A stretch of 64,000 bases of DNA from Mytilus edulis (Eukaryota): the NCBI RefSeq assembly GCF_963676685.1, contig NC_092347.1, forward strand, positions 2,356,001-2,420,000, in the 5' to 3' direction. Shown piece by piece: positions 431-61,096 of this stretch. The position numbers were made by a program, and so were the translations under genes. The notes beneath the pieces are model-generated. The model worked only from the letters and a program-made list of their open reading frames with translations, was not told the DNA's origin and made no database searches. Position 1 is the stretch's first letter; the number at the start of each line of letters is the position of its first letter.

Positions 431-1258
431 TTTAAATACATTTGTTGTAACTGACAACTATTCAAATTAAGAGAGTTGTGAAATGTATGTATTTAATCCC
501 GGATCAATTATAAACAGGTTTCACTATATATGATGACAGTTCTTCTAGTGTGGTTGCATATTTTACCATCGGTTCTAATGCTTCTCTCAGCTCTTTTGCA
601 TTTGTTGTCTCTCTTTGTTATCAGCGAAAAAATATCTTAATGACTTAACGGTAGTGTGGGGGTGCCTGACTAAATGCAACTATAAAAACACATACAATTG
701 CACACTCTCAATACAGTTACCTTTAGATTCTGATTAAATGATGACACATTAAAATGATTCCTAGGTACATTTGTACTTATCACATCCATTGTATTTTTAA
801 CATTATTTTTATCTCTCTTAAGATAAGATGTGTCATGAAAGCAAATGACATAACTTCAAACAGAGACAAAATGACATAGAAATATTCTTTTTGTCTTCTA
901 TAATATTAAGCATTAAAAGTATTTTTCTCAATAATTACAAATCTCATGTGGTTAACACATCATTATGACTAGAACTCTATAGGTAAAAGACAAGAAGTAG
1001 CTGGAATCCATTAAGAAACTGCTGTAAACTTGTCTAATATTTGTCATAGATATAAGAAGATGTGGTGTGAGTGTCAATGATGTTTATTTCATTCTACGTC
1101 ATAAGGTATTCAATAATCCTGTTATTCTGTTTAATTCATAACCAGACATCTCAATGTTTTCAAGATTTTTTTCCTTAAAATAATTAAAATTGACAATGGA
1201 AATGGAGAATGTGTCACAGAGACAACAACCCCACCTAAGGACAGAAAACATATACCAT

Positions 1259-1634
1259 TCTCTTGAACTGAATTTTAATGTGCGTAATGTTATTGTTTTA
1301 CTTTTCTACATTGGCTAGAGGTATAGGGGGAGGGTTGAGATCTCATAAACATGTTTAACCCCGCCGCAATTTTGCGCCTGTCCCAAGTCAGGAGCCTCTG
1401 GCCTTTGTTAGTCTTGTATGATTTTAAATTTTAGTTTCTTGTGTATAATTCGGAGTTTAGTATGACGTCCATTATCACTGTACTATTATGCATATTTTAG
1501 GGGCCAGCTGAAGGACACCTACGGGTGCGGGAATTCTCGCTACATTGAAGACCCATTGGTTGCCTTCGGCTGTTGTTTGCTCTATGGTCGGGTGGTTGTC
1601 GCTTTGACATATTCACCATTTCCTTTCTCAATTT
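1259..1634 (+). mobile_element. 3' tail fragment of PLE family 1
   Basis: Near-identical to the reverse complement of ~23580..23955. Absent from the paralogue at ~11945 (catataccatatataact); 'cat' is duplicated at the junctions. Confidence 0.85.
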
Positions 1635-2599
1635 CATATATAACTATCGTCAAGAATCAAGATCATGTTGGGAGTATTCCAATCGATTTAAAAATTGAAA
1701 CATGCGGCTGGCGCAAATACAAAACTTTTATCCTGATATATATGATGAGTTTATTATTAACACCCTCAAAAAGAAATAAATCCTTCAAATGTTCAAAAAT
1801 TTTCCTTAAAAGATTTTCAATGAGCTAATGATCATTATTTGCTTTTAACGTATAAAATGTGTATCTTTAAGTTGTGTTTTACATACCTCCAATTTTTTTT
1901 CTACTTGAATTCTTATGATGGCAATTAACAGCCACATTCCACAGCTTGTTGTGGTAATAAAAATCTTTAAAATCACCCAATATGTCTGTTTAGTCTGATA
2001 GCAGTACATTTAACTATTGGTACAACTAAACAATCAAATAATATGGATGCAGGATTATTGAATAGTGGACACAAGTCGGACTATTCTATCACTGGTTTGC
2101 TAACGTTATCAAAATATTAAGTCAAGAAAGTAGGACCACCAATACCTATTTATTTTGTTGTGTTGATGACAATAACTAAAATGGACCTTTGATCACATTA
2201 TAACTAAAAAGTGAGGACTGTTGGTCACATGGTGACAGAAGATAAAACTGAAAATGTTATTGCCCATATGATTCAATGTAATCTATATGGTATCATTGTC
2301 ATTATATATGAGAACGAAAAAAAGTTTATAAACATCCAATGAAGTATATAAGGTTAGACCTTAAGTTTTCAAAGGAAAATAATTCTTTTAATTGACTTAT
2401 CGGATTCCAGAATTTATCATTGGAGCTGTGATTTTTATTCAATTGAGTATGCATGCCCAATCTCGTTCAAATTGGCCTTGCAATTCCACTGGAATTGACA
2501 TCATGATAAAACTACATAGTAACAGGGTAATGAGTAATTGCAATAGTTTATAAAGATATCATTGAGCCAGATGAACTAATAGCATTTATAAAAATCACT

Positions 2600-3480
2600 T
2601 ACACTTTATCAGTGTACCCTTACAGTCTTAAATGAATGCAATCCAACATGGAGACAGATAAATGCAGCTGTCCCACAGGGCTCAATTGTATGTCTTTCGT
2701 CGTTAAAATCTTAACAACGAAATTGTAACTGATATTAAAGCAAATATTAAATATTTTGCAGATGACACAATTATCCATATTACGGTAGACACCCCTGCTC
2801 AGATTCTGAATAGAGATCTGAACAAGATTCATATGTGGTCCTCTGTGGTCCTCTTAACTTTATTTCACAAAAAACAAAACCCCTAGTTACTTCAATTAAT
2901 CCTAGTCATCTGTTTTTAACAATGAATGACAATGATCTTTAAGAAGTTGCTACTCATAAAGTCTTAGGTATTATTTGTTTTCAAATAATGGGTTATGAAA
3001 TAATCACAATGAATGTATAGTCAAACGAGTATAGAATAGAATAAATATCCCAGGGAAGGTCGTTTATGCTCAATGGGTTCACTTTAGAAAAAGTGTCTAT
3101 TTCATATATTCAACCAATTCTAGACTACGGGAATGTCATTTGAGATAATCAAACACAATGTTTGATTAATAAAGTAGAAAATGTTCTAATTAAAGTAATG
3201 ATAATTGTAACTGGTAGGAACAAATTAACTTAGATACAGATACGTTATGAGGAAACAGGTTGGGAAACCCTCTCAGAAAGAAAGGAAAAACACAAGCTCA
3301 CTATGTTTTATAAAATTGTGAATAAGAAAACTCCGGATTATTTACAAAACTTGGTACCAAATCAAAAAGTAAATTTGCAGAACCATTTCACATGTGAGAC
3401 TTAAATTATTTCGAAAACGGCACAAGAACAAACCACTACTCCAATTTTTTTCATTCCTTCGTCTATCAAATTGTGGAATA
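2600..3480 (+). pseudogene. Degenerate LINE (CR1-like) RT fragment
   Basis: Remnants encoding VPQGS (~2670) and YIxPILDYG (~3105); the paralogue 12440..12900 has GVPQ and LFDDDSS. Many frameshifts and stops. Confidence 0.6.
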
Positions 3481-3694
3481 AGTTAGAAGAACAATTTAAT
3501 TCTTTTCTTCTTTGTTATATTTTTATTATTTTCATTAATTTCAAGTTATATTTTCCCTCACTTTCTTTGATATGTTGTAACTTATTCATTCTAGTTCAAT
3601 ATCATTGTTACATAGCGTGCTATATTTACGTAATAGTTAATTGGAGTTGGTATTTCATAGAAACAGAGTAATGTAAGCTATATATTAGAATGGT

Positions 3695-3963
3695 ACCTAC
3701 CGAATTAGACTATTCACCGGATTTGTCATAACATAAGCAACGCTACGGGTGCCAAATGTGGAGCAGGATATGCTTACCCTTCCGGAGCACCTGAGATACC
3801 CATATTTTTTTTGGTTGGGTTCGTGTTGCTTAGTTTTTAGTTTTCTATGTTGTGTCTTCTGTACTATTATTTGTTTCTTTGTCTTTTTATTCTTAGCCAT
3901 GGCGTTGTCAGTTTATTTTCTATCTATGAGTTTGACTGTCCCTCTGGTATCTTTCGTCTCTCT
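3695..3963 (+). mobile_element. 3' UTR fragment of PLE family 2
   Basis: Matches the reverse complement of 38875..39140 (cctaccgaattagactat...gagtttgactgtccctctggtatctttcgt). Confidence 0.8.
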
Positions 3964-4429
3964 TCTATGTACTGCTTGTTTTCAAATCACATTTTAATTA
4001 TGTATTTTTGTATGATGTTATATTTGTAATGATGACGAATAAATATGAAACTAAGTCCAATAATAATTCCGTATAGAAAGACAGTAAGAGAAACGGAAAT
4101 ATTCATAAGCTTAGGAACTAAGAAAAGCACTTAAAGTGATTGGTTTATACATAGTAACTTAATTGCACCGAAACTCATTGCGAATGTCAGATAATTTATT
4201 ACAAGAATACAAAGTGTGAATATAAGGATCCTTGAACAATTAACCTCATGCATCACCTAGATGAACAACAGTTTTTTGTTGTATGAACAAAAATTTACAA
4301 GGATACTAATGTTATTTGCCTATTTTAATAATTACAGAAGTATAATGTAACATACGGTTAAATAACCTAAATCAATTAAGAGACACACATATTATATCCA
4401 AATAAGTGAAATATATATATATATAAAAC

Positions 4430-7323: not shown

Positions 7324-7370
7324 TATGCCAGACGTGCGTTTCGTCTACATAAGACCCATCAGTGACGCTC
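7324..7370 (-). ncRNA. Type I hammerhead ribozyme, A9G core variant (probably impaired)
   Basis: Minus strand gagcgtca-CTGATGG-gtct-tatgt-agac-GAAA-cgcac-GTC-tggca. Confidence 0.75.
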
Positions 7371-7677: not shown

Positions 7678-7724
7678 TACGCCAGACGCGCGTTTCGTCT
7701 ACATAAGACTCATCAGTGACGGTC
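7678..7724 (-). ncRNA. Type I hammerhead ribozyme, intact core
   Basis: Minus strand cgtca-CTGATGA-gtct-tatgt-agac-GAAA-cgcgc-GTC-tggcg: stem I cgtca/tggcg, stem II gtct/agac, palindromic stem III acgcgcgt. Confidence 0.9.
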
Positions 7725-21800: not shown

Positions 21801-23009
21801 CTTATAAGTTAAAAATAAACTGAGAACACCCTCCTCAATTGACTTTTGTGTTTTTTATGAAAAGGAAAATAAAAGCTCGCTCATATGGCATATGATAAGT
21901 TAAAGTCACAACAAGTCTCAAGTCAATATATGTCCTATGTAAGTTGACCGCTATAGTTCAGAGTAATGAATTTCAAACTGAATAATTGTTTGGATACATT
22001 CTTTCATTTCTTTTTTTTTTTCTTATTGTGTACAAATCTTTGTTTTGGACAGTATACACTTTATAAGATTATGTTAATTATGTATGTGTCTTTGAGTTCT
22101 TTTTTTTTTACAATGCTTTGACAGTTAACAAATTTTTAGATTGATAAAGATGACTAAATCTGCATTTTGATTGATTTTGACAAATTGTGGTTATATATAT
22201 ATTCCAATAATGACTCCGACTATTTTTTAAACTAGTTTTAATTGTGTATATTCCTATGTGTTTGTTATTCTACATGGTATAAAGGTATAATGAGTGATTA
22301 CATCTCATAAAACAAAATTGACCCCACTCAATTCATGCACATGTCCCCAATCAAAACCTCTTGCCTTTGAGAGTAGTATGTACTTTTTAATTTTAGTTCT
22401 ATTAAATGTTTCTGCGTGAAGAGATTGTTTCATTTTGACCAACTAGTATACATCATATTTTGGAGCCAGATGAAGTCCCCCTGCAGGTGCCGTGATGTCT
22501 TACAATGTTGAAGACCCTTAAGTAGCCTTGAGTTGATTTCTGCTCTTTAATAAGATTGTTGTCTTTTTTGTTTTTAACCTTTTGAGTGAAATAAATTCAA
22601 CGGAAATTGGCGCTACTTTGCAGATTTTTTTCCAAATGACTTGTTTAACCTTAAACAACATAATATGAAGGTTTCCAGCCAAGGTTTTTCACACTTTGTT
22701 ATTAGACTTTTGTACTTTTCTATTCCATGATTGCCCATTAACTTATTAAAGATCAATACAATGTTATCCAGTAGGATGAAACCCTGCTTGTATTGTACTG
22801 AACCGACTGTCATTGTAATATACTGCTGACAAAAACCTAAATGGACTTCATTGATAGCAACAAATGGGTTGTCTTAAGCATTCATGATCAAATGGTTTAC
22901 AATGAAATAAGGTTTAATTGGTAAACAAAATGCTCTTGTACAAAAATTATAACAATGCTAGCTCACTTTTATTTTCTGTAAAGAGTAACACACACACTAA
23001 TTGTTAATG

Positions 23010-23118
23010 CGTACTATTGTTTGTCTGTTTGTATTTTTCATTTTTAGCTATGGCGTTGTGAGTTTATTTTCGATTTATGAGTTTGACTGTCCCTCTGGTA
23101 TCTTTCGTCCCTCTTTTT
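23010..23118 (+). mobile_element. 3' tail fragment of PLE family 2
   Basis: gtactattgtttgtctg...ggtatctttcgtccctctttt. Confidence 0.8.
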
Positions 23119-24096
23119 GAATTGAATGCATACACAACTGTACACGAGTTGCTATGGATATAGTAACTATTGCAACTGCATGGCAACTGGGAACTATTAA
23201 TTAAGGTATATATCACAGTTTAATGGGGCATAACTGCAAAACAACTAAGATAAATTCAGTCGACCACTGTTTAGTAAACCCTAAATATGGGTCAATGCTG
23301 AAATTGCCATATATGTATAACTAATCAATGTAGACCGTTTATGTTGTTGCAATTATATGAAAGTGGTAAATGTTATGTCGTTGATGTTCTAAGATTTTGG
23401 TTGAAAACTGTAGGAGATGATGAACCCTAAGTTAATGCCTACTTTAACACACTTTCAATTAAGTAAGCAGTAATCATTTTTGTTAAACAGATGAAAGAAG
23501 ATGTTGGGTATACTCCCTTTGGTCATTCAATATATATAAGCTCATATAATATAGGCCAATAGCAGTTAATCTAACTTTAAAATTGAGAAAGGAAATGGTG
23601 AATATGTCAAAGCGACAACCACCCGACCATAGAGCAAACAACAGCCGAAGGCAACCAATGGGTCTTCAATGTAGCGAGGATTCCCGCACCCGTAGGTGTC
23701 CTTCAGCTGGCCCCTAAAATATGCATAATAGTACAGTGATAATGGACGTCATACTAAACTCCGAATTATACACAAGAAACTAAAATTTAAAATCATACAA
23801 GACTAACAAAGGCCAGAGGCTCCTGACTTGGGACAGGCGCAAAATTGCGGCGGGGTTAAACATGTTTATGAGATCTCAACCCTCCCCCTATACCTCTAGC
23901 CAATGTAGAAAAGTAAAAGAATAACAATACGCACATTAAAATTCAGTTCAAGAGAAGTCCGAGTCTGATGTCAAAAGATGTAACAAAAGAAAATAAATAA
24001 AATGACAATAATACATAAATAACAACAGACTACTAGCAGTTAACTGACAAGCCAGCTACAGACCTCAATTAAACTGATTGAAAGATTATGTCTTCA

Positions 24097-24163
24097 TCAT
24101 ATGAATATCAGGTACAATCCCTCCCGTTAGGGGTTTAGTATCATACTATCATAAAATATATGA
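24097..24163 (-). promoter_or_regulatory. SECIS element (form 2)
   Basis: Minus strand tcatat-atttt-ATGAT-agtatgatact-AAA-cccc-taac-ggg-a-gggattgtacc-TGAT-attc-atatga: helix I, AUGA/GA core, ~11-bp helix II, apical AAA and mini-helix. Confidence 0.85.
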
Positions 24164-24216
24164 GAAGAACATAACCCGTGTCATGCCAACAACTGTTTTT
24201 TTAGAAATAAATGTGT

Positions 24217-26193
24217 TTAGTTCCGATGCAAAGACCCTATCAGTGAATCAATGTTAAAGCCAAAATATGCAATCTTTAATGACCTGACAACAGTATCGTA
24301 ACTATATCCCCTTTTAATAAGTCTATTTAAAGGTTTTGTTAGTTTCTGAGGAGAATACTGACATTTTTGTGCTTTATAAAGAATATTTCCATAAAATTTT
24401 GGATGTGAAATACCTGAACGTATAAGATGTCTGCATGTTGAGTTATATTTACGATTTATTTCCTTATACCGGTGATAAAATTTAGTAAATGTTTTGACCA
24501 GTTTGTGATATCGAAAACCCTGGTGTAATAATTTTTCAGTAATACATAAATTTCTCTCGCTAAAATCTAATACATTGTTACATACACGAGCGAATCGTAC
24601 AAGTTGAGATATATAAACACCATAAGATGGTAACAAGGGAACGTCACCATCTAAAAATGGATAATTAACAATAGGAAATGAAAAATCATCTCTTTTATCA
24701 TAAATTTTTGTATTAAGCTTCCCGTTTATGATATAGATATCAAGATCGAGGAAAGGGCAGTGGTCATTGTTATCATTAGCTTTATTTAAAGTAAGTTCTA
24801 CAGGATAAATTTCTTTAGTATACATACTGAAGTCGTCATTATTTAGAGCCAATATATCATCCAAATATCTAAAAGTATTGTTAAATTTTTGTATCAAATG
24901 TTGTTTTGATGGGTCTTTGCTAATTTTAGTCATAAATTGTAACTCATAACAATACAAAAACAGGTCCGCAATAAGTGGTGCACAGTTAGTCCCTATTGGA
25001 ATTCCAATAACTTGACGATATACGGAATCTCCAAAGCGAACAAAAATGTTATCAAGTAAAAATTCAAGTGCATAAATAGTATCAAAGCATGTCCAATTGA
25101 CATAGTTCTTTTGTTTATTGCTACTAAAAAATGATCTAAAAGAGTTTGAACATATGTACTCGCATTCCGACTTTTTAAATGCCCAGTTAATTAGGGATGT
25201 GAATTTTTTTTTAATAAGAATATGAGGTAAAGTGGTATATAGGGTAGAAAAATCAAAACTTTGAACAGATTCAAAATCACCAATATATGCATGCAATTTA
25301 TCAAGTACTTCCAACGAGTTTTTGACACTCCAAAAGTAATTAATTCCACTATTTTCAAAGGCCTTATTTGAACAATTTATTATCAGGTTTTTTATTGTAC
25401 CAAGTGTACTAGTAAGTAAAACAGACAATTTAGTAGTTGAACAATGGCTGGAAGATGAAATAAATCTATATTTGTAAGGTTTTTTGTGCAGCTTCGGAAG
25501 CCAGTACATAGTTGGGACTTTCATTGTGTTTGGTTCTGCTTGTAAAGAAGTAGCTAAAAGTTTATGTTTGTTACAGATGTCGTTTTCTGAAAATGAAGTC
25601 AGTTGGAATGTTGGTGAATTCGTGATTTTCTTTTGCAGAACCTCTATATAAAATTTACGTCAAACAATAATGATATTATTAGCAGCTTTATCAGCCGGGA
25701 CAAAAACAAATTCCTTGGCTAGTTCTGTTAGTTTATTTTTGATACGCGAAATAGGGTTTTTATAGTTTTTGTTGAGGGTAAAATGTTCTTTAAAATGTTG
25801 TATTCGAATATCAACTATCTTCATTACTGAATTAAAAAAAGAGTCCAAAGATTTTTTGTCAGCTTTTTCCCGTTTTACCCATTTCAAACAGTAGGCGCGG
25901 AGTGAGTCGTTGATGATATTACGACACTCATTCCAGTTAATAGTTGACGGGGGACGATATTTAGGTCCTTTACTGAGGAATGATTTTAACTCTCGGTCGC
26001 GAACGATGTTAAGGTCTCCTGTTATAACATGGGAAATTGGTCCATAGGTGTATTCTGAATTACTGCAATTACACGACATAGGTGTATTTTCAGTGATATT
26101 TACATCTTTACACAATTGGCTATAATTAAACACATATTTTCGGGTAGATTTCTTGTAAATATAACAAATGAGAGGGAGTTCAGTATTATCAAA
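24217..26193 (-). CDS. PLE reverse transcriptase, 658 aa if the TGA at 25660..25662 is read as Sec; N-terminus missing
   Basis: YWLPKLHK, FDFSTLYT, GIPIGTNCAP, FRYLDD, FLDL and YDKRDDF motifs. The 45 codons between the TGA and the ATG at 25524 are open and in frame. No C-terminal GIY-YIG domain. Confidence 0.85.
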
Positions 26194-26194
26194 A

Positions 26195-26489
26195 TTTCAA
26201 AGGCCTTATTTGAACAATTTATTATCAGGTTTTTTATTGTACCAAGTGTACTAGTAAGTAAAACAGACAATTTAGTAGTTGAACAATGGCTGGAAGATGA
26301 AATAAATCTATATTTGTAAGGTTTTTTGTGCAGCTTCGGAAGCCAGTACATAGTTGGGACTTTCATTGTGTTTGGTTCTGCTTGTAAAGAAGTAGCTTAA
26401 AGTTTATGTTTGTTACAGATGTCGTTTTCTGAAAATGAAGTCAGTTGGAATGTTGGTGAATTCGTGATTTCCTTTTGCAGAACCTCTAT
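26195..26489 (-). repeat. Direct duplication of RT segment 25353..25647
   Basis: 295 bp with only two substitutions seen, one of which creates TAA. Confidence 0.9.
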
Positions 26490-27006
26490 CAGACCGGAGA
26501 TAACCCTTCACCTACATTACAGAAAATTGTTTTGATTCCAAGGTAAATAAAACAATAAAACTGGTGATCGATATTGCCGTGCACGCGACCAAATATACGA
26601 CATATGACTATACTGTCTATTCTTAGTTTTCACATGTTTATTCAAGTGTTTACAAATAGAACCAACATGAATAAATCAGTATATATCACACCATAAAATT
26701 AAATTAGCTAACTTATTGGTTTAAAATTACAAAATTTACAGCATTGAAAAACCCATATTTCAAATTAGAATAAAATTGTTGCCACTTTTATAATGATACT
26801 TTAAAAGCATTTATTGGTAATGTATTCATCCAAAAACAAATACTTAAGATAAGTATTGCACACAGGTAAACACATTTGTATTTGAACTACCTTTTATAAC
26901 TTCATGACTATTTCGTAAAAAGAATAGGACACTCACATTTTTGCTTGCCTCCCTTTTCAATAGCCTCCCCTGCCCAAAAAAATATGGGCGCACACAATAT
27001 TTTCTC

Positions 27007-33454: not shown

Positions 33455-34540
33455 TAAAAGAGGGACGAAATATACCAAAGGGACAGTCAAACTCATAAAT
33501 AAAAAATAAACTGACAACGCCATGGCTAAAAATGAAAAAGACAAACAGACAAACAATAGTACACATGACACAACATAGAAATCTAAAAAATAAACAACAC
33601 GAACCTCACCAAAAACTAGGGGTGATCTCAGGTCCTCCTGAAGGGTAAGCAGATCCTGCTCCACATGTTGCATCCGTCGTGTTGCTTATGTGATAACAAA
33701 TCCGGTAAATAGTCTAATTCGGTAGGTCACATTCATGAAAGGGAAGGGGATTGTAGTTACGACGTAAGAAACATATCCGATTTCATTTGTGAAACGGTTA
33801 TTCCATAACGGTCAACCAACTCGTGATGGCGTCCGTAAAATTTACGAAGGGATGATTTCAACTTCACCATTTGGAACTCTTGGTTTAATGGCTTCCTTGT
33901 GAGCAGCAACCATCTATCAAGAAAATAATGATAGGAAATGCAAGCACGGGAATATCGTATCAATAGACCACTTTCGAGTTCATCCGTCACCGGAAAAAAA
34001 TCGTCAACTATACGCGCCTTTATGACGTCATTTACCAGATAGAGGGGGTTGCCTGTATCCCTGCACTATTTACGTTGTTCATCAAGCGTCTTAGTGATCG
34101 TCATTGTGCAGGATAAACTAGAAATAATGGTTGTTCTGTAGGTACTTAATGACAATTCTCTAATGACAGCAATGCTGATTGTCAATTTTGAGAATTCAAT
34201 TTGCCGAATAATTCGTACAATATAGAATTATAGTTTTCCAACCACTCGCTCAACATTGGAATGGAAGTGACGACGCCCCTAAACGCATAAATGACGTTCA
34301 CTAAAACCAGAGTTTTTGACGTAAATGCATCGAACTCGAAAGTTGTCTGTTGGGACATATATACCCCGTATGCAGGTGCTGCTGGAATGTTGCTACTTAG
34401 AAATGGAAAGTTCACAACTGGAAAGCTGAAATCATCTCTTGTGTCGTAAAGTTTTGTTTCAGCCGACCCTCATTGTCAATTTCTAGATGAAAGTCAAGAT
34501 ATAAGGCCGACTTAACTGTATCTGTAGTATCCTTTATCCT
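33455..34540 (-). mobile_element. PLE family 2 3' fragment interrupted by a MITE
   Basis: NFPFLSSNIPAAPAYGVY and LIRYSRAC..KFYGRHH motifs split by the insertion at 33965..34348. Confidence 0.85.
33965..34348. mobile_element. MITE with 17-bp TIRs
   Basis: agaccactttcgagttc / gaactcgaaagttgtct (16/17 match); empty site cgtatcaattggga at ~39370. Confidence 0.85.
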
Positions 34541-35219
34541 TAGTAAAAATATAAATTACGATATTGTAGCATGTAACGCTTATTTTGTTTTCCGATACTT
34601 TATATACCAAGACTGTAATCAAATTTTTACTGAACTAAAAAATAATCCGTGAATTTCTGTGGCTTGAATTTTGAGAAATTCAGGATGCATGCAAATTTGT
34701 ATCAATATGTTTTCAAGTGTATTTTATACCTTTATAGTTCTTTTTCAAATTGTTTTATTTGATATTATCTCAAAAATATACACATTTCACTTTTTTTTAA
34801 AAGTCTTTATATGCAGCTCAATGAGCTCAAAATGCATTGAAAAAAGTTCTTACTTGGTAAAACAACTGTCCATAGAACTGGATTTTCAAAACTGTCACTT
34901 GCGTAGACGCTTGTCCATGTTAGAACACTAGATGGTTATAAACTCAACATATTCATCTTACTTTATATGAGAATATGAATTTGGAACAATAAATAAAATA
35001 ATCAACTATGTAAAGTCGAGAGCCGTTTAGAGTAAGAGGTTTGACATTTTTTTCTGAAACCCAGTAACATTATCTCGAGGAGGAGGAAAATAAGAAACAT
35101 GAGACATAGAAAACTGCTCAACATCTGGTGTCTATACATGTATTATATAAAACAAGTTGAAGGTCCTGCTGTAAAGATATAGCTTAATCCAAGAAGTCAC
35201 TTGTTAATACAGATTTTTT

Positions 35220-38874: not shown

Positions 38875-39524
38875 AAGAGGGACGAAAGATACCAAAGGGA
38901 CTGTCAAACTCATAAATCTAAAACAAACTGACAACGCCATGGCTAAAAATGAAAAAGACAAACAAACAACAGCACACACGACACAACATAGAAAACTAAA
39001 GAATAAACAACACGAACCCCACCAAAAAACTAGGGGTGATCTTAGGTGCTCCGGAAGAGTAAGCAGATCCTGCTCCACATGCTGCACCCGTCGTGTTGCT
39101 TATGTGATAACAAATCCGGTAAATAGTCTAATTCGGTAGGTCACATTCATGAAAGGGAAGGGGATTGTAGTTACGACGTAAGAAACATATCCGATATCTT
39201 TTGTGATACGGTTATTCGATAACGGTCAACCAACTCGTGATGGCGTCCGTAAAATTTACGAAGGGATGATTTCAACTTCATCATTTGGAACTCTTGGTTT
39301 AATAGCTTCCTTGTGAGCAGCAACTCTCTATCAAGAAAATCATGATAGGAAATGCAAGCACGGGAATATCGTATCAATTGGGAGATATATACCCCGTATG
39401 CAGGTGCTTCTGGAATGTTGCTACTTAGAAATGGAAAGTTCACAATTGGAAAGCTGAAATCATCTCTTTTGTCGTAATGTTTTGTTTTCAACCGACCCTC
39501 ATTGTCAATTTCTAGATGTAAGTA
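38875..39524 (-). mobile_element. PLE family 2 3' fragment with TSD
   Basis: YDKRDDFSFPIVNFPFLSSNIP..YGVYISQLIRYSRAC; TSD tcttaa; empty site at ~52860. Confidence 0.9.
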
Positions 39525-39919: not shown

Positions 39920-40860
39920 ACCAATGATCCATGACAATGCGGTTAAGGTAGGGTAAACACTGCCTGACAGACTTGTATCCTCATTAAAATTTTCCATTCT
40001 CAATTCTATGTATACCTGACTATTATTCCATACACCAAATATATATAGTTTACCTATTGGTTACATTAGTACCAAAGAAACAGACATAACAAGGGAAACT
40101 TTACATTGACAGATAAATATTAAAAATGAGGTCACGGTCAGATGATGCTAACCAGACTAAATGTACACATAAACAATTATTCCATTCACGAAATAAAGTT
40201 GACCTATTGCTTATCAAAGTATAGAAAAAGGCTTACCTGTTAAACTGGAAAACGTAACATTGAGCAATGAACCATTAACAATTATAAAGGACGAGTGAAA
40301 TTTGCCAGACAGAGATGTACACCTTACAATCATTTCATAAACCAAATATAGTTGACATACTACTAAACACTATTTAAACAACAGACCAAAACACTAAAAA
40401 TAAATATTGCCCAACGAACCATGAAAATGAAACCAAGTTCAGATGAAACCTGATAGACTGACATGTATACCTTACAATTATTCCATATTCCACATGTAAA
40501 TTACCTGCAGCTTATAGTATAGTTATCAAAGGTTCCAGGATTATAATTTAATACGCCAGACGCGCGTTTCGTCTACATAAGACTCATCAGTGACGGTCAT
40601 ATCAAAACAGTATCTGCGAAACTAACCGAATCATGTAATTTTTTCATTGATCCTTGAAATAAGGTAAAAGTCAGTTGATCACTATCTGACAGAAATCATA
40701 ACACACGTTAAGACCTTACAAGGAAGCCATATACCAAATATAGTTCATCTTGTATTCATAAGTGAGAAACTCACTTGATAAACATAAAAATACCTTTTTT
40801 AAAAAGCAGTCGCTGAACCATGAAAATAAAGTCCAGGACAATGGACATATGAAGGACGAT
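39920..40860. repeat. Degenerate ~150-bp tandem repeats (bivalve satellite/Helentron-associated type)
   Basis: Recurrent ccatgaaaatgaggtca...accaaatatagttgacc; paralogous arrays at ~54180..54970, ~56860..57440 and ~62260..62850. Confidence 0.6.
40552..40598 (-). ncRNA. Type I hammerhead ribozyme (solo insert 40521..40608), intact
   Basis: cgtca-CTGATGA-gtcttatgtagac-GAAA-cgcgc-GTC-tggcg. Confidence 0.9.
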
Positions 40861-44504: not shown

Positions 44505-45357
44505 ATTGAATAAGGTCTGTGCAGATAGTTTTTGATACATAAATGAAGCATTCCACTCAATTTAAGGTTATCACTATTATGAAACTAACAGTCCTTAATA
44601 AAAAAATAAATTAAAAAACATTTATTAGCATGACCAGTTATTTTATAAGTCATTGTTAAGTTAAGCCGGTACTTATCCATCAGAAGGTTATAATTATGGG
44701 ACAAAATCAGAACAAAGGTTACACTTCGGAACTCTATAAAAGGTATCAAAATCTATTCTGAACTCTATAAAAGGTATCAAAATCTATTCTGAACTCTATA
44801 AAAGGTATAATTAGTAGTCTGATTGGCAAATTATAGGTAGTCCTTTACAGCCATGTGATACTAAATAAATGTACACAATTCATGACTTTTTCGTCAATGT
44901 GTTGCCCTTTCAATGTCTTTTGGTAATTTGTGTTGATTGTTTGTTGTCTCATAACTGTTTTCTATAAATATCCCCTTTTTCATAAAACTGGGACCTAATT
45001 AAGGATCAATATGTACAAAAAAAACTGTATATATTGTTAAAGATTGTTATGTACTGCGAAGATGTTAATTTTGTTTTATTGTGTTAATATAAAGCTCTTT
45101 TCTTAATATATTTCTTTTTTCCTTCATTAAACTTACAAGCAAATAAAATACTGGCATTCCATGCTTGTTATATTTGAGCTTCAAAACATTTTCTCCTTGC
45201 TATATTCAATTATAAACGTTTTGGTTATTTATTCACAATATATATATATATATATATATATCTGTCAAGACTAATTCATATACAGTAATTCAACCATAGA
45301 TTAAATAACCTATTTTTACTTAAACAATTGACATAGAAAATAAGAAATTATTATCAT

Positions 45358-46247
45358 AAAATGGAGAATGGAAATTGGGAATGTGTCAAAGAGACAACAA
45401 CCCGACCATAGAATAGACAACATCAGCAGGTCACCAACAGGTCTTCAATGCAGCGAAAAATTCCTGCACCCGGAGGCGTCCTTCAGCTGGCCCCTAAACA
45501 AATATACAAAAATAAACCAATATACTTGTTCAGTGATAATGAACGCCATACTTAAAATTAAAAAAGACTAACAAAGGCCAGAGGCACCTGACTTGGAACA
45601 GGCGTAAACATGCGGCGGGGTTAAACATGTTTGTGAGATCTCAACCCTCCCCCTATACCTCTAACCAATGCAGGAAAGTAAACGCATAACAATACGCACA
45701 TTAAAATTCAGTTCAAGAGAAGTCCGAGTCTGATGTCATAAGATGTAACTAAAGAAAATAAAACGAAATGACAATAATACATAAATAACAACAGACTACT
45801 AGCAGTTAACTGACATGCCAGCTCCAGACTTCAATTAAACTGATTGAAAGACTATGTCTTCATCATATGAATATCATACACAATCCTTCCCGTTAGGGGT
45901 TTAGTATCATACCATCATAACATATATGAGAAGAGCATAACCCGTGTCATGCCAACAACTGGTGTTTAAATAAATGTGTTTAGTTCCGATGCAAAGACCC
46001 TCTAAGTGAATCAATATTAACGCCAAAATATGCAATCTTTAATGACCTGACAACAGTATCGTAACTATGTCCCTTCTTAATAAGTCTATTTAAAGGTTTG
46101 AGGTGAATACTGACATTTTTGTGCTTTATAAAGAATATTTCCATAAAAAATTGGATGTGAAATACCTAAACGTATAAGAAGTCTGCATATTGAGCTATAT
46201 TTACGAATAATGTCCTTATACCGATGATAACATTTATTAATGTTTTG
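45358..46247 (-). mobile_element. PLE family 1 3' fragment (RT C-terminus plus UTR)
   Basis: Colinear with 23580..24495. Confidence 0.9.
45863..45929 (-). promoter_or_regulatory. SECIS element copy
   Basis: ATGAT-ggtatgatact-AAA-cccctaacggga-aggattgtgta-TGAT. Confidence 0.7.
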
Positions 46248-46981: not shown

Positions 46982-47630
46982 TGCATCGGAACTAAACATA
47001 TTTATTCTAAAAACAGTTGTTGGCATGACACGGGTTATGTTCTTCTCATATATGTTATGATGGTATGATACTAAACCCCTAACGGGAAGGATTGTGCCTG
47101 ATGTTCATATGATGAAATCATAATCTTTCAGTCAGTTTAATTGAAGTCTGGAGCTGGCATGTCAGTTAACTGCTAGTAGTCTGTTGTTATTTATGTATTA
47201 TTGTCATTTTGTTTATTTTCTTTGGTTACATCTTCTGACATCAGACTCGGACTTTTCTTGAACTGAATTTTAATGTGCGTATTGTTATGCGTTTACTTTT
47301 CTACATTGGTTAGAGGTATAGGGGGAGGGTTGAGATCTCACAAACATGTTTAACCCCGCCGCATTTTTGCGCCTGTCCCAAGTCAGGAGCCTCTGGCCTT
47401 TGTTAGTCTTGTATTATTTTAATTTTAGTTTCTTGTGTACAATTTGGAAATTAGTATGGCGTTCATTATCACTGGACTAGTATATATTTGTTTAGGGGCC
47501 AGCTGTAGGACGCCTCCGGGTGCGGGAATTTCTCGCTACATTGAAGACCTGTTGGTGACCCTCTGCTGTTGTTTTTTATTTGGTCGGTTTGTTGTCTCTT
47601 TGACACAGTCCCCATTTCCATTCTCAATTT
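46982..47630 (+). mobile_element. PLE family 1 3' UTR copy
   Basis: Starts at the last RT codons (catcggaactaa) and ends ctcaatttt; flanked by an atatg duplication; empty site at ~55470. Confidence 0.9.
47046..47112 (+). promoter_or_regulatory. SECIS element copy (best-paired)
   Basis: tcatat-atgtt-ATGAT-ggtatgatact-AAA-cccc-taac-ggg-a-aggattgtgcc-TGAT-gttc-atatga. Confidence 0.85.
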
Positions 47631-47744
47631 TATATGAACATTCAAACTGTCCCTTACTTTGGGACAATGTCTAGACCCCTTGCAATTGTGTAATAGGGAT
47701 ATATTAAGCTGTCAGACTAAATAATCCTAATTGTTATGTCTATA

Positions 47745-57148: not shown

Positions 57149-57195
57149 TACGCCAGACGCGCGTTTCGTCTACATAAGACTCATCAGTGACGGTC
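57149..57195 (-). ncRNA. Type I hammerhead ribozyme (solo insert 57118..57205), intact
   Basis: Insert identical to 40521..40608. Confidence 0.9.
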
Positions 57196-60632: not shown

Positions 60633-61096
60633 TAGTTATCAAAGGTACCAGGATTAAAATTAATACGCCAGACGCACGTTTCGTCTACATAAGACTCATC
60701 AGTGACGCTCATATCAAAATATTTATAAAGCCAAAGAAGTACAAAGTTGAAGAGCATTGTGGATTCAAAATTCCAAAAAGTTGTGCCTATTATGGCTAAG
60801 GTAATCTATGCCTGGGATAAGAAAATCCTAGTTTTTCGATAAAAACAAAGTTTTGTAAACGGAAAATTTATAAAAATGAACACATTATTGATATTCATGT
60901 CAACACCGAATTCGAAGTGTTGACTACTGGGCTGGTGATGCCCTCGGAGACAAAACGTCCACCAGCAGTGGCATCGACACAGTGGTTAAAATAGTTATCA
61001 AAGGTACCAGGTTTATAGTTTAGTACGCCAGACGCGCGGTTAGTCTACATAATACTCATCAGTGACGCTCATATCAAAATATTTGTAAAGCCAAAC
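60633..61096 (-). mobile_element. Family-1 retrozyme monomer bounded by two hammerheads 360 nt apart
   Basis: The hammerhead at 60664..60710 has an intact core; the one at 61024..61070 has GAAA mutated to TAAC. Confidence 0.9.

What the first reader, a model, noticed from the sequence alone, without database searches (positions are those of the whole stretch)
24097..26193. Retrotransposon encoding a selenoprotein reverse transcriptase: in-frame UGA plus SECIS
Seen: the ORF track splits the RT at TGA 25660..25662, but the frame continues as DKAANNIIIV-U-RKFYIEVLQKK...AEPNT-MKVPTMYWLPK. This gives one 658-aa frame with this TGA as its only interruption. A complete form-2 SECIS lies ~54 nt after the stop, on the same strand. 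Established: eukaryotic Sec insertion needs a UGA plus a 3' UTR SECIS, and Naiad-clade PLEs (N-terminal GIY-YIG) have been reported to encode selenoproteins. Inference: homologues usually have Cys here (DKAxNN...C-K/R-x-x-Y, from memory), so the UGA is Sec rather than decay. Full-length RT synthesis, and so mobility, would then depend on selenium supply. The absence of a C-terminal endonuclease fits a domain-permuted PLE whose EN was lost by 5' truncation.
Basis: partly seen in the sequence, partly recalled or inferred. Interest (0 to 1): 0.92.

Follow-up and report, generated by a model that had tools for sequence, protein, structure and literature searches.

The report
Selenocysteine-coding Naiad retrotransposon, truncated copy
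This is a 5'-truncated, dead copy of a very young and abundant Naiad-type Penelope-like retrotransposon whose full-length protein needs four UGA codons read as selenocysteine with help from an RNA signal in its own 3' UTR. This kind of element is already published for clams and spiders, and is here found in another genome that looks like a mussel's.

Summary
TGA 25660-25662 (-) is the only interruption of a 658-codon frame, and Rfam SECIS_1 matches 24098-24162 (-), 54 nt after the TAA (30.9 bits, below the curated 35, E 0.0004-0.003).

The window copy is unit positions 1413-4030 of a 4,030-bp Naiad Penelope-like element. Full-length copies elsewhere in this genome encode 1,002 codons: an N-terminal GIY-YIG endonuclease, a CxC/GxKY/DKA linker and a TERT-like reverse transcriptase. 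They carry four in-frame TGAs (codons 55, 86, 97, 522) and no TAA or TAG.

All four TGAs align with near-invariant cysteines of homologues. The window's TGA sits 8 residues after DKA, a Sec site published for Naiads (Craig et al. 2021).

- TGA is fixed in 405 of 408 exact-flank genomic copies.
- 17 of 19 full-ORF copies are intact.
- Variants shared between copies are mostly synonymous.
- Related families whose ORF stops at this site form one well-supported clade.
- The genome has tRNA-Sec and SepSecS.

Verdict: a new member of a known kind. Sec insertion itself is inferred, not shown. Other first readers of this scan noted the same family elsewhere in this genome.

The parts
23578..24216 (-). 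3' UTR of the element (639 nt), down to the element's 3' end at 23578
   Evidence: blastn of a full-length genomic unit (L031:5095-9124) against the window: 99.58% identity over 2,618 bp, window 26195-23578. In tandem copies the unit ends at the same base.
24098..24162 (-). SECIS element, form-2-like: AUGA core, AAA bulge, CCC/GGG apical mini-stem and a 3' UGAU
   Evidence: Rfam SECIS_1 model positions 1-64, 30.9 bits (gathering score 35), E 0.0026 and 0.00044. RNAfold gives the helix I / internal loop / helix II layout. The AUGA, AAA and GA nucleotides are invariant between the young and old subfamilies.
24217..24219 (-). TAA, the true stop codon of the ORF
24220..25659 (-). Reverse-transcriptase segment, 480 codons (YLDD at 24867-24856)
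   Evidence: 24,524 homologues at E<=0.001 in the representative library. AlphaFold model with mean pLDDT 89.7. Best structural matches are telomerase RTs (E 3e-9, TMq up to 0.53), then DRT2 and group II intron RTs. A profile search of PDB sequences hits DRT1 weakly (E 0.01). No Pfam RVT_1 hit for the single sequence.
25660..25662 (-). In-frame TGA, codon 522 of the full-length ORF, candidate selenocysteine, 8th residue after DKA
   Evidence: Aligned with Cys in 37/37 and 86/86 homologues. This Sec site is published for Naiads.
25663..26195 (-). Linker segment of the ORF (codons ~344-521) with CxC (26073-26065), GPKY (25968-25957) and DKA (25692-25684). The copy is 5'-truncated at unit position 1413 and has no endonuclease.
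   Evidence: Diagnostic motifs as defined in PMC8557442 section 6.
26196..26489 (-). 295-bp internal fragment of the same element (unit 1961-2255, the stretch just after the TGA), joined head-on to the truncated copy. This kind of complex junction is typical of PLE insertions.
   Evidence: blastn 99.66% to L031:7055-7349, and a second hit. It explains the duplicated MKVPTMYWLPK ORF at 26100-26366.

Best explanation
Window 23578-26195 (-) is a 5'-truncated, non-autonomous insertion of a young, high-copy Naiad-clade Penelope-like retrotransposon. The full element is 4,030 bp: a 382-nt 5' UTR, one ORF of 1,002 codons and a 639-nt 3' UTR.

The ORF encodes, in order, an N-terminal GIY-YIG endonuclease with two zinc-finger-like motifs, a KR-rich/CxC/GxKY/DKA linker, and a TERT-like reverse transcriptase. 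Four codons that are cysteine in homologues are UGA here:
- codon 55, the second Cys of CX2-5CxxC;
- codon 86, the Cys just before GIY-YIG;
- codon 97, the first Cys of the CCHH finger;
- codon 522, the 8th residue after DKA.

The proposed mechanism is inferred, not shown. The SECIS hairpin, 54 nt after the TAA in the element's own mRNA, recruits the host Sec machinery (SBP2, eEFSec, Sec-tRNA). All four UGAs are then read as selenocysteine and the full EN-RT protein is made. A read that terminates at codon 55 would give a useless peptide.

The window copy kept only the fourth UGA and the SECIS. It has neither endonuclease nor 5' UTR, so these features are inherited and idle at this locus.
For: Shown:
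- All four in-frame stops are TGA and the ORF holds no TAA or TAG.
- Each TGA aligns with a near-invariant Cys of homologues: 24/25, 30/30, 32/32 and 37/37.
- The DKA+8 site, the Cys before GIY-YIG and the first CCHH Cys are the published Sec sites of clam Naiads.
- TGA is present at all four sites in every sampled copy that covers them: 24/24 for the first three and 41/41 for the fourth.
- Genome-wide, exact-flank copies at codon 522 read TGA 405 times, TGT 3 times, and TGC or TGG never. At codon 97 there are 189 exact-flank copies, and the 100 listed are all TGA.
- 17 of 19 copies spanning the ORF are fully open apart from the four TGAs.
- Variants shared by two or more copies are 15 synonymous against 8 non-synonymous, where about 1:3.8 is expected (binomial p 5e-6, or 5e-4 with a generous synonymous fraction of 0.30). 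They lie on both sides of the TGAs.
- 37 diverged protein clusters (40-94% identity) end exactly at ...DKAxNNxxx[V/I], meaning a stop at the same site.
- In a tree these fall in one clade of 45 tips (38 are 'stop' tips, counting this element itself; support 0.997). Four Cys and three Trp tips are nested inside it, and all 23 tips outside are Cys.
- The three TGT copies in this genome share three further diagnostic substitutions, which marks a Sec-to-Cys subfamily.
- SECIS_1 is hit at the expected place and strand.
- The genome has five tRNA-Sec genes (79.6 bits, anticodon TCA) and a SepSecS gene.
Against:
- The SECIS scores 30.9 bits, under Rfam's gathering score of 35. SECISearch3 could not be run. 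The fold's energy is not better than shuffles (z -0.92).
- There is little SECIS covariation, because the available copies are too alike.
That they are TGA is therefore inferred.
- The length filter of the homologue search favours ORFs cut at the stop.
- Four recoding events per protein demand efficient, processive decoding.
Confidence: 0.85

Rival explanations
1. The TGAs are real terminators. The family is then a non-autonomous or defective lineage, copied in trans by a Cys-type Naiad. Relatives at about 80% identity do read Cys at the DKA+8 site.
For: Cys-reading relatives exist: P0152, P0153 and P0155 read DKAANNII[IV]VC. PLE copies are often mobilised as fragments. No expression data could be obtained.
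Against: Purifying selection acts on variants shared between copies, including downstream of the first TGA. Stops occur only at four invariant-Cys codons and are all TGA, within an otherwise intact 1,002-codon frame in 17 of 19 copies. The stop at DKA+8 is kept across a clade down to about 40% identity. A SECIS sits where a selenoprotein gene needs it.
Confidence: 0.06
2. The UGAs are read through without Sec, either by near-cognate tRNAs (Trp, Cys, Arg) or by reinitiation. The SECIS-like hairpin would then be coincidental or serve another role.
For: Two of the four sites have the leaky UGA-C context (codons 55 and 522). The SECIS is below Rfam's threshold. Three related clusters carry Trp at the site.
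Against: The other two sites are UGA-A, a strong termination context. Four successive low-efficiency read-throughs would yield almost no protein. Exchanges at the site are overwhelmingly with Cys, the usual Sec partner. The SECIS core is invariant between subfamilies, and SECIS hits in the window occur only in this family's 3' UTR.
Confidence: 0.06
3. This is ordinary decay: the TGA is a chance nonsense mutation in a dead retrotransposon copy.
For: The window copy itself is truncated and dead.
Against: The TGA is fixed in 405 of 408 exact-flank copies and in every sampled copy. It coincides with a published Sec site.
Confidence: 0.01

Closest known systems
[quoted passage not shown]
   Same: N-terminal GIY-YIG plus C-terminal RT. 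UGA at the Cys before GIY-YIG, at the first Cys of CCHH and at DKA+8. 3-4 UGAs per ORF. SECIS in the 3' UTR. High copy number, 5' truncation and partial tandems.
   Different: This element has a fourth UGA at the second Cys of CX2-5CxxC, a position reported only for a spider family. It has no UGA in RT6(D). Its SECIS lies 54 nt after the stop and is form-2-like, whereas the published ones are type I and 1-21 nt after the stop. The host genome is different: 1.37 Gb, 14 chromosome-scale contigs, mussel-like by inference. Sequence-level kinship to the published families could not be tested because the supplements are not held.
Naiad_Sdum and Naiad_Smim (Stegodyphus spiders; same paper)
   Same: UGA at DKA+8, at the Cys before GIY-YIG, and in the CX2-5CxxC finger. 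Naiad_Sdum has both the first and second Cys as UGA.
   Different: The spider families keep Cys at the first CCHH position. Chelicerate Naiads lack the IFD. The paper infers an independent origin for spiders and clams.
Cys-type Naiads of bivalves (e.g. the Mytilus and oyster families, Penelope-2_CGi) and the ~80%-identical Cys-reading relatives P0152, P0153 and P0155
   Same: Same architecture and motifs. DKAANNII[IV]V-C-RK[YH]Y differs from this element essentially by Cys in place of UGA.
   Different: They read through with Cys. Whether they keep a SECIS or UGAs in the endonuclease could not be checked.
Selenoprotein P (multi-Sec proteins; up to 132 UGAs in molluscs, Baclaocos et al. 2019 as cited in PMC8557442)
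   Same: Several UGAs are decoded from one mRNA by a 3'-UTR SECIS in a Sec-rich host lineage.
   Different: It is an unrelated protein and a host gene, not a mobile element. SelP typically has two SECIS elements.
Canonical EN+ PLEs (Penelope/Poseidon, Neptune, Nematis)
   Same: TERT-like RT, GIY-YIG endonuclease, pLTR/tandem/inverted insertion structures.
   Different: Their endonuclease is C-terminal, they carry hammerhead ribozymes in pLTRs, and they have DKG rather than DKA. None is known to encode Sec.

Membership tests
Naiad clade of Penelope-like elements | Permuted order: GIY-YIG endonuclease N-terminal to the RT in one ORF | tested here: met
   Full-length genomic copies read ...IIYLLT-U-NKPGCGIQYVGET... 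about 425 codons before the DKA motif. This aligns with homologues whose N-terminus hits Pfam PF01541: P0012 32.9, P0020 32.6 and P0324 25.5 bits, cut-off 22.6. The window copy itself lacks it through 5' truncation. The element's own pieces give no Pfam hit, because the UGAs split the domain.
Naiad clade of Penelope-like elements | Diagnostic linker motifs: CxC, GxKF/Y, and DKA instead of DKG | tested here: met
   CNC at 26073-26065, GPKY at 25968-25957 and DKA at 25692-25684 (-). Definitions from PMC8557442 section 6.
Naiad clade of Penelope-like elements | CX2-5CxxC and CCHH zinc-finger-like motifs around GIY-YIG | tested here: met
   C-HAKK-U-LT-C, and U-x6-C inside the GIY-YIG core, with UGA in place of two of the cysteines.
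Naiad clade of Penelope-like elements | RT related to telomerase RT; IFD between RT3 and RT4 | tested here: inconclusive
   The predicted fold (pLDDT 89.7) is closest to TERTs (E 3e-9). The IFD as such was not delimited.
Naiad clade of Penelope-like elements | Insertion anatomy: 5' truncation, partial tandems (pLTR), inverted adjacent copies, unit of 3.4-4.4 kb | tested here: met
   The unit is 4,030 bp, with tandems at 4,030-4,031-bp spacing. Truncation gradient: 6,940 SECIS cores, 408 codon-522 sites, 189 codon-97 sites. An inverted pair lies at 45356-46247 (-) and 46982-47633 (+).
Naiad clade of Penelope-like elements | No canonical hammerhead ribozyme in the element | tested here: met
   No Hammerhead hit inside 23000-27000 at E<=10. 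The hammerhead hits elsewhere in the window belong to other repeats.
Eukaryotic selenoprotein gene | In-frame UGA aligned with Cys (or Sec) in homologues, with coding conservation continuing downstream | tested here: met
   All four sites align with Cys. The ORF is intact downstream in 17/19 copies. Shared variants are mostly synonymous.
Eukaryotic selenoprotein gene | SECIS element in the 3' UTR, same strand, more than ~50 nt from the UGA | tested here: inconclusive
   Full-length SECIS_1 match with AUGA, AAA and GA, 54 nt after the stop and 1,497 nt after the UGA, E 0.0004-0.003. At 30.9 bits it is below Rfam's gathering score of 35. SECISearch3 is not available here.
Eukaryotic selenoprotein gene | Host has the Sec machinery | tested here: met
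   Five tRNA-Sec genes at 77-79.6 bits (cut-off 47). ARAGORN calls one of them tRNA-SeC with anticodon TCA. SepSecS exons lie at C4:25.72 Mb.
Eukaryotic selenoprotein gene | Sec actually incorporated (75Se labelling, mass spectrometry, SECIS-dependent reporter) | not testable with these tools
   This needs wet-lab work.

The most novel reading that the evidence does not exclude
The element is an undescribed, apparently still active four-Sec Naiad lineage in a mussel-like genome. It belongs to a large clade in which the UGA at DKA+8 arose once and has been kept down to ~40% protein identity, with occasional reversions to Cys or Trp. Some sister families may have gained a further Sec at the first Cys of the diagnostic CxC motif. 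Its 3' UTR may also pair the SECIS with a permuted twister-like self-cleaving motif in place of the hammerhead of other PLEs. About 7,000 dispersed SECIS copies would be raw material for new host selenoprotein genes.
Probability: 0.2. Interest if true: 0.7.

Novelty: new member of a known kind. Interest (0 to 1): 0.5.

Why it matters
Transposable elements that encode selenoproteins are so far known from one paper and four families. That paper's authors predicted that more had been overlooked in bivalves, because the UGAs look like stops.

This family is a well-supported additional case, based on chromosome-scale data:
- hundreds of near-identical copies, with most sampled full-length ORFs intact;
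- four Sec codons in a combination not reported before;
- evidence of purifying selection across the UGAs;
- a subfamily that switched Sec back to Cys;
- about 7,000 SECIS cores scattered through the genome by 5'-truncated insertions.

It is a practical system for asking three questions. Why would zinc-finger-like cysteines of an endonuclease and RT be replaced by Sec? Does transposition respond to selenium supply? Do TE-borne SECIS elements seed new selenoprotein genes?

It is also a warning for annotation. ORF callers split this element into pieces and Pfam sees neither domain.

Tried and rejected
- Pfam on the element's own pieces gave no RVT_1 and no GIY-YIG hit. The domains were recognised only through homologues, a profile and a predicted fold.
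- phmmer of the RT piece against PDB sequences found nothing meaningful.
- The RNAfold energy of the SECIS is not better than shuffles (z -0.92). This is uninformative for a short AU-rich kink-turn motif.
- SECIS covariation could not be assessed. The young and old subfamilies differ at only five positions, of which one turns a U-G pair into U-A and one a G-C pair into A-C.
- The TGY pattern with mismatches allowed also caught TGA copies, so it was repeated without mismatches.
- A search with an old TGT copy found no close kin among the 40 best-scored places. Kinship of the three TGT copies was shown instead by shared diagnostic sites.
- A twister ribozyme in the 3' UTR, noted by other readers, gets no Rfam support at E<=10. 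It is kept only as a lead.
The script machine gave no answer twice, and the tree was redone.
Copies were compared only with one real genomic copy.
Full report
**1. What is in the window**

On the minus strand, the frame from 26193 to 24220 is open for 658 codons apart from TGA at 25660-25662, and it ends in TAA at 24217-24219.

Rfam's SECIS_1 model matches 24098-24162 (-) over its whole length (model positions 1-64). The match has the AUGA core, an AAA bulge, a 3-bp apical mini-stem and the 3' UGAU. It scores 30.9 bits against a curated gathering score of 35. The E-value is 0.0026 in a 4-kb search and 0.00044 in a 671-nt search, both counted over all 4,227 families. The match starts 54 nt after the stop codon and 1,497 nt after the TGA.

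In the whole 64-kb window, both strands, the only other SECIS hit at E<=1 is the homologous site of another copy of the same family (47047-47111, 32.3 bits).

**2. What the element is**

A DNA search of the window's own genome (1.37 Gb, 14 chromosome-scale contigs) gave more than 4,000 first-look candidates. The 40 scored copies are 99.6-100% identical over 2,051 bp, and several sit in tandems spaced 4,030-4,031 bp apart. A real genomic copy, L031:5095-9124, defines a 4,030-bp unit.

The window copy corresponds to unit positions 1413-4030 (window 26195-23578, 99.58% identity). Directly upstream, at 26196-26489, lies a 295-bp internal fragment of the same unit. This explains the duplicated MKVPTMYWLPK ORF seen.

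The linker carries the Naiad-diagnostic motifs CxC (CNC), GxKY (GPKY) and DKA, as defined by Craig et al. 2021 (PMC8557442).

**3. The full-length ORF**

In full-length copies the ORF runs from an ATG at unit position 383 to the TAA at 3389. That is 1,002 codons with exactly four in-frame stops, all TGA, at codons 55, 86, 97 and 522, and no TAA or TAG.

An alignment with X at the four sites was made against 37 full-length homologues from a 1.84-billion-protein library. Each site falls on a near-invariant cysteine:

| Codon | Position in the protein | Cys in homologues |
|---|---|---|
| 55 | second Cys of CX2-5CxxC | 24 of 25 |
| 86 | Cys just before GIY-YIG | 30 of 30 |
| 97 | first Cys of the CCHH finger | 32 of 32 |
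| 522 | 8th residue after DKA | 37 of 37 (86 of 86 by motif) |

The homologues carry an N-terminal Pfam GIY-YIG domain.

The RT piece gives no Pfam hit as a single sequence. It has 24,524 relatives at E<=0.001, and it folds with pLDDT 89.7 into a structure whose best PDB matches are telomerase RTs (E 3e-9). This fits the published kinship between PLE RTs and TERT.

**4. Comparison with the literature**

Craig et al. 2021 describe four Naiad families, two from clams and two from spiders, with three or four in-frame UGAs and a SECIS. [quoted passage not shown] In the clams UGA also replaces the first CCHH cysteine. In the spiders it replaces the first, or the first and second, cysteines of CX2-5CxxC.

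The present family has the three clam positions plus the second CX2-5CxxC cysteine. Its SECIS is 54 nt from the stop and form-2-like, whereas the published ones are type I and 1-21 nt from the stop.

The same paper counted Naiads in Mytilus galloprovincialis but did not list a mussel family as Sec-encoding. Three further full-text searches found no later report. That this genome belongs to a mussel is my inference from its size and its 14 large contigs. No tool named the organism.

**5. Is the TGA functional or decay?**

- *Fixation.* All sampled copies that cover the sites have TGA: 24 of 24 at codons 55, 86 and 97, and 41 of 41 at codon 522. Genome-wide, with exact 30-nt flanks, codon 522 reads TGA 405 times, TGT 3 times, and TGC or TGG never. 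Codon 97 has 189 exact-flank copies, and the 100 listed are all TGA.
- *Intactness.* 17 of 19 copies spanning the ORF are open throughout apart from the four TGAs.
- *Selection.* Variants shared by two or more copies arose in lineages that went on transposing. They are 15 synonymous against 8 non-synonymous, where about 1:3.8 is expected (p 5e-6, or 5e-4 under a generous synonymous fraction). They lie before, between and after the TGAs. Singletons, which are mostly post-insertion changes, are 32 against 48.
- *Depth.* A homologue search with the 424-residue piece between codons 97 and 522 returned 37 clusters at 40-94% identity whose predicted ORFs end exactly at ...DKAxNNxxx[V/I]. Several of them start right after the codon-97 site. 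In a FastTree tree of the linker region, all 38 'stop' tips (these 37 plus this element) fall in one clade of 45 tips with support 0.997. Four Cys tips and one group of three Trp tips are nested in that clade, and all 23 tips outside it are Cys. This pattern points to one origin of the stop, long retention, and a few reversions.
- *Cys exchange within this genome.* The three TGT copies are old (89-94% identity to the young unit). Besides the T at position 1948 they share three further substitutions that neither the young copies nor the other old subfamily (which has TGA) carry. This marks a Sec-to-Cys subfamily.
- *Host machinery.* The genome has five tRNA-Sec genes, one confirmed with anticodon TCA, and a SepSecS gene.

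The homologue search's length filter favours ORFs that are cut at the stop. No expression or protein data could be obtained.

**6. Mechanism (inferred)**

The element's mRNA carries one SECIS in its 3' UTR. With the host's SBP2, eEFSec and Sec-tRNA, the four UGAs would be read as Sec and the EN-RT protein completed.

Generic read-through is an unlikely substitute. Two of the sites are UGA-A, a strong termination context, and four successive leaky events would leave almost no product.

Dependence of transposition on selenium supply follows logically but is untested. The window copy itself cannot be expressed as an autonomous element.

**7. SECIS details**

The young and old subfamilies differ at five positions in the 85-nt region around the SECIS. 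AUGA, the AAA and the GA are unchanged. In helix II one change turns a U-G pair into U-A, and another turns a G-C pair into A-C. This is too little variation for a covariation test.

The SECIS core occurs about 6,940 times in the genome with at most one mismatch. The reversed-pattern control finds none. This far exceeds the roughly 1,200 copies that reach codon 522.

**8. Side observations**

- Eight related clusters end exactly before the first Cys of the CxC motif. This may be an additional Sec site in sister families.
- The 3' UTR at about 23806-23898 (-) contains blocks that resemble a permuted twister ribozyme. The resemblance is to a consensus I recall from memory, and other first readers of this genome noted the same. 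Rfam reports no twister at E<=10 and the fold energy is unremarkable. I treat it as an untested lead.

**9. Verdict**

The thing is a new member, with a new combination of Sec sites, of a kind of element described in 2021. Other first readers of this scan noted the same family on other pieces of this genome. My four-TGA result was obtained before I saw those notes.

Noticed in passing
window 23806-23898 (-), inside the element's 3' UTR: Twister-like sequence blocks (an outer 9-bp stem GGCUAGAGG/CCUCUGGCC, AGGGGGAGGG, UAA-CCCC-GCC, and a CCUG-UCCCAAGU-CAGG hairpin) suggest a P5-type permuted twister ribozyme. The region is almost invariant between the young and old subfamilies. Rfam finds no twister at E<=10 and the fold z-score is -0.75, so this is unconfirmed. 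The consensus is recalled from memory.
   Followed up: partly
proteins P0280, P0287, P0291, P0292, P0294, P0307, P0320, P0322: Eight related clusters (45-72% identity) end exactly one residue before the first Cys of the linker CxC motif. This suggests a further in-frame stop (Sec?) at that Cys in sister families, a position not in the published list. Their DNA could not be fetched.
   Followed up: partly
window 45356-46247 (-) and 46982-47633 (+): Two older 5'-truncated copies of the same family (87% and 91% identity to the young unit) lie in inverted orientation. The second keeps a SECIS at 47047-47111 (32.3 bits); the first has lost a detectable one.
   Followed up: partly
window 1258-1634 (+): A 377-bp 3'-terminal fragment of the young family (99.7% identity). 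It is too short to include the SECIS.
   Followed up: no
window 39189-39524 (-) and 34290-34546 (-): Short C-terminal RT fragments of other Naiad-like families (~50% protein identity to relatives of this element).
   Followed up: no
window 7325-7368, 7679-7722, 40553-40596, 57150-57193, 60665-60708 (-): Sub-threshold Hammerhead_1 hits (26.6-31.7 bits, gathering score 34). They look like retrozyme-like repeats unrelated to this element.
   Followed up: no
genome-wide: There is a steep 5'-truncation gradient: about 6,940 SECIS cores, about 1,200 copies reaching codon 522 (408 with exact flanks) and 189 exact-flank copies reaching codon 97. Thousands of orphan SECIS elements are therefore dispersed in the genome.
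   Followed up: yes
G000 C10:14401393-14442259 and contig C945: About 45 tRNA-like genes repeat every ~895 bp and score 45.9 bits on the tRNA-Sec model, just under its cut-off of 47. They are probably a tandem array of another long-arm tRNA.
   Followed up: no
L032 1-4254 (G000 C2:6410000-6414253): A 41-bp satellite array of about 4.2 kb directly abuts a triple tandem of the element.
   Followed up: no
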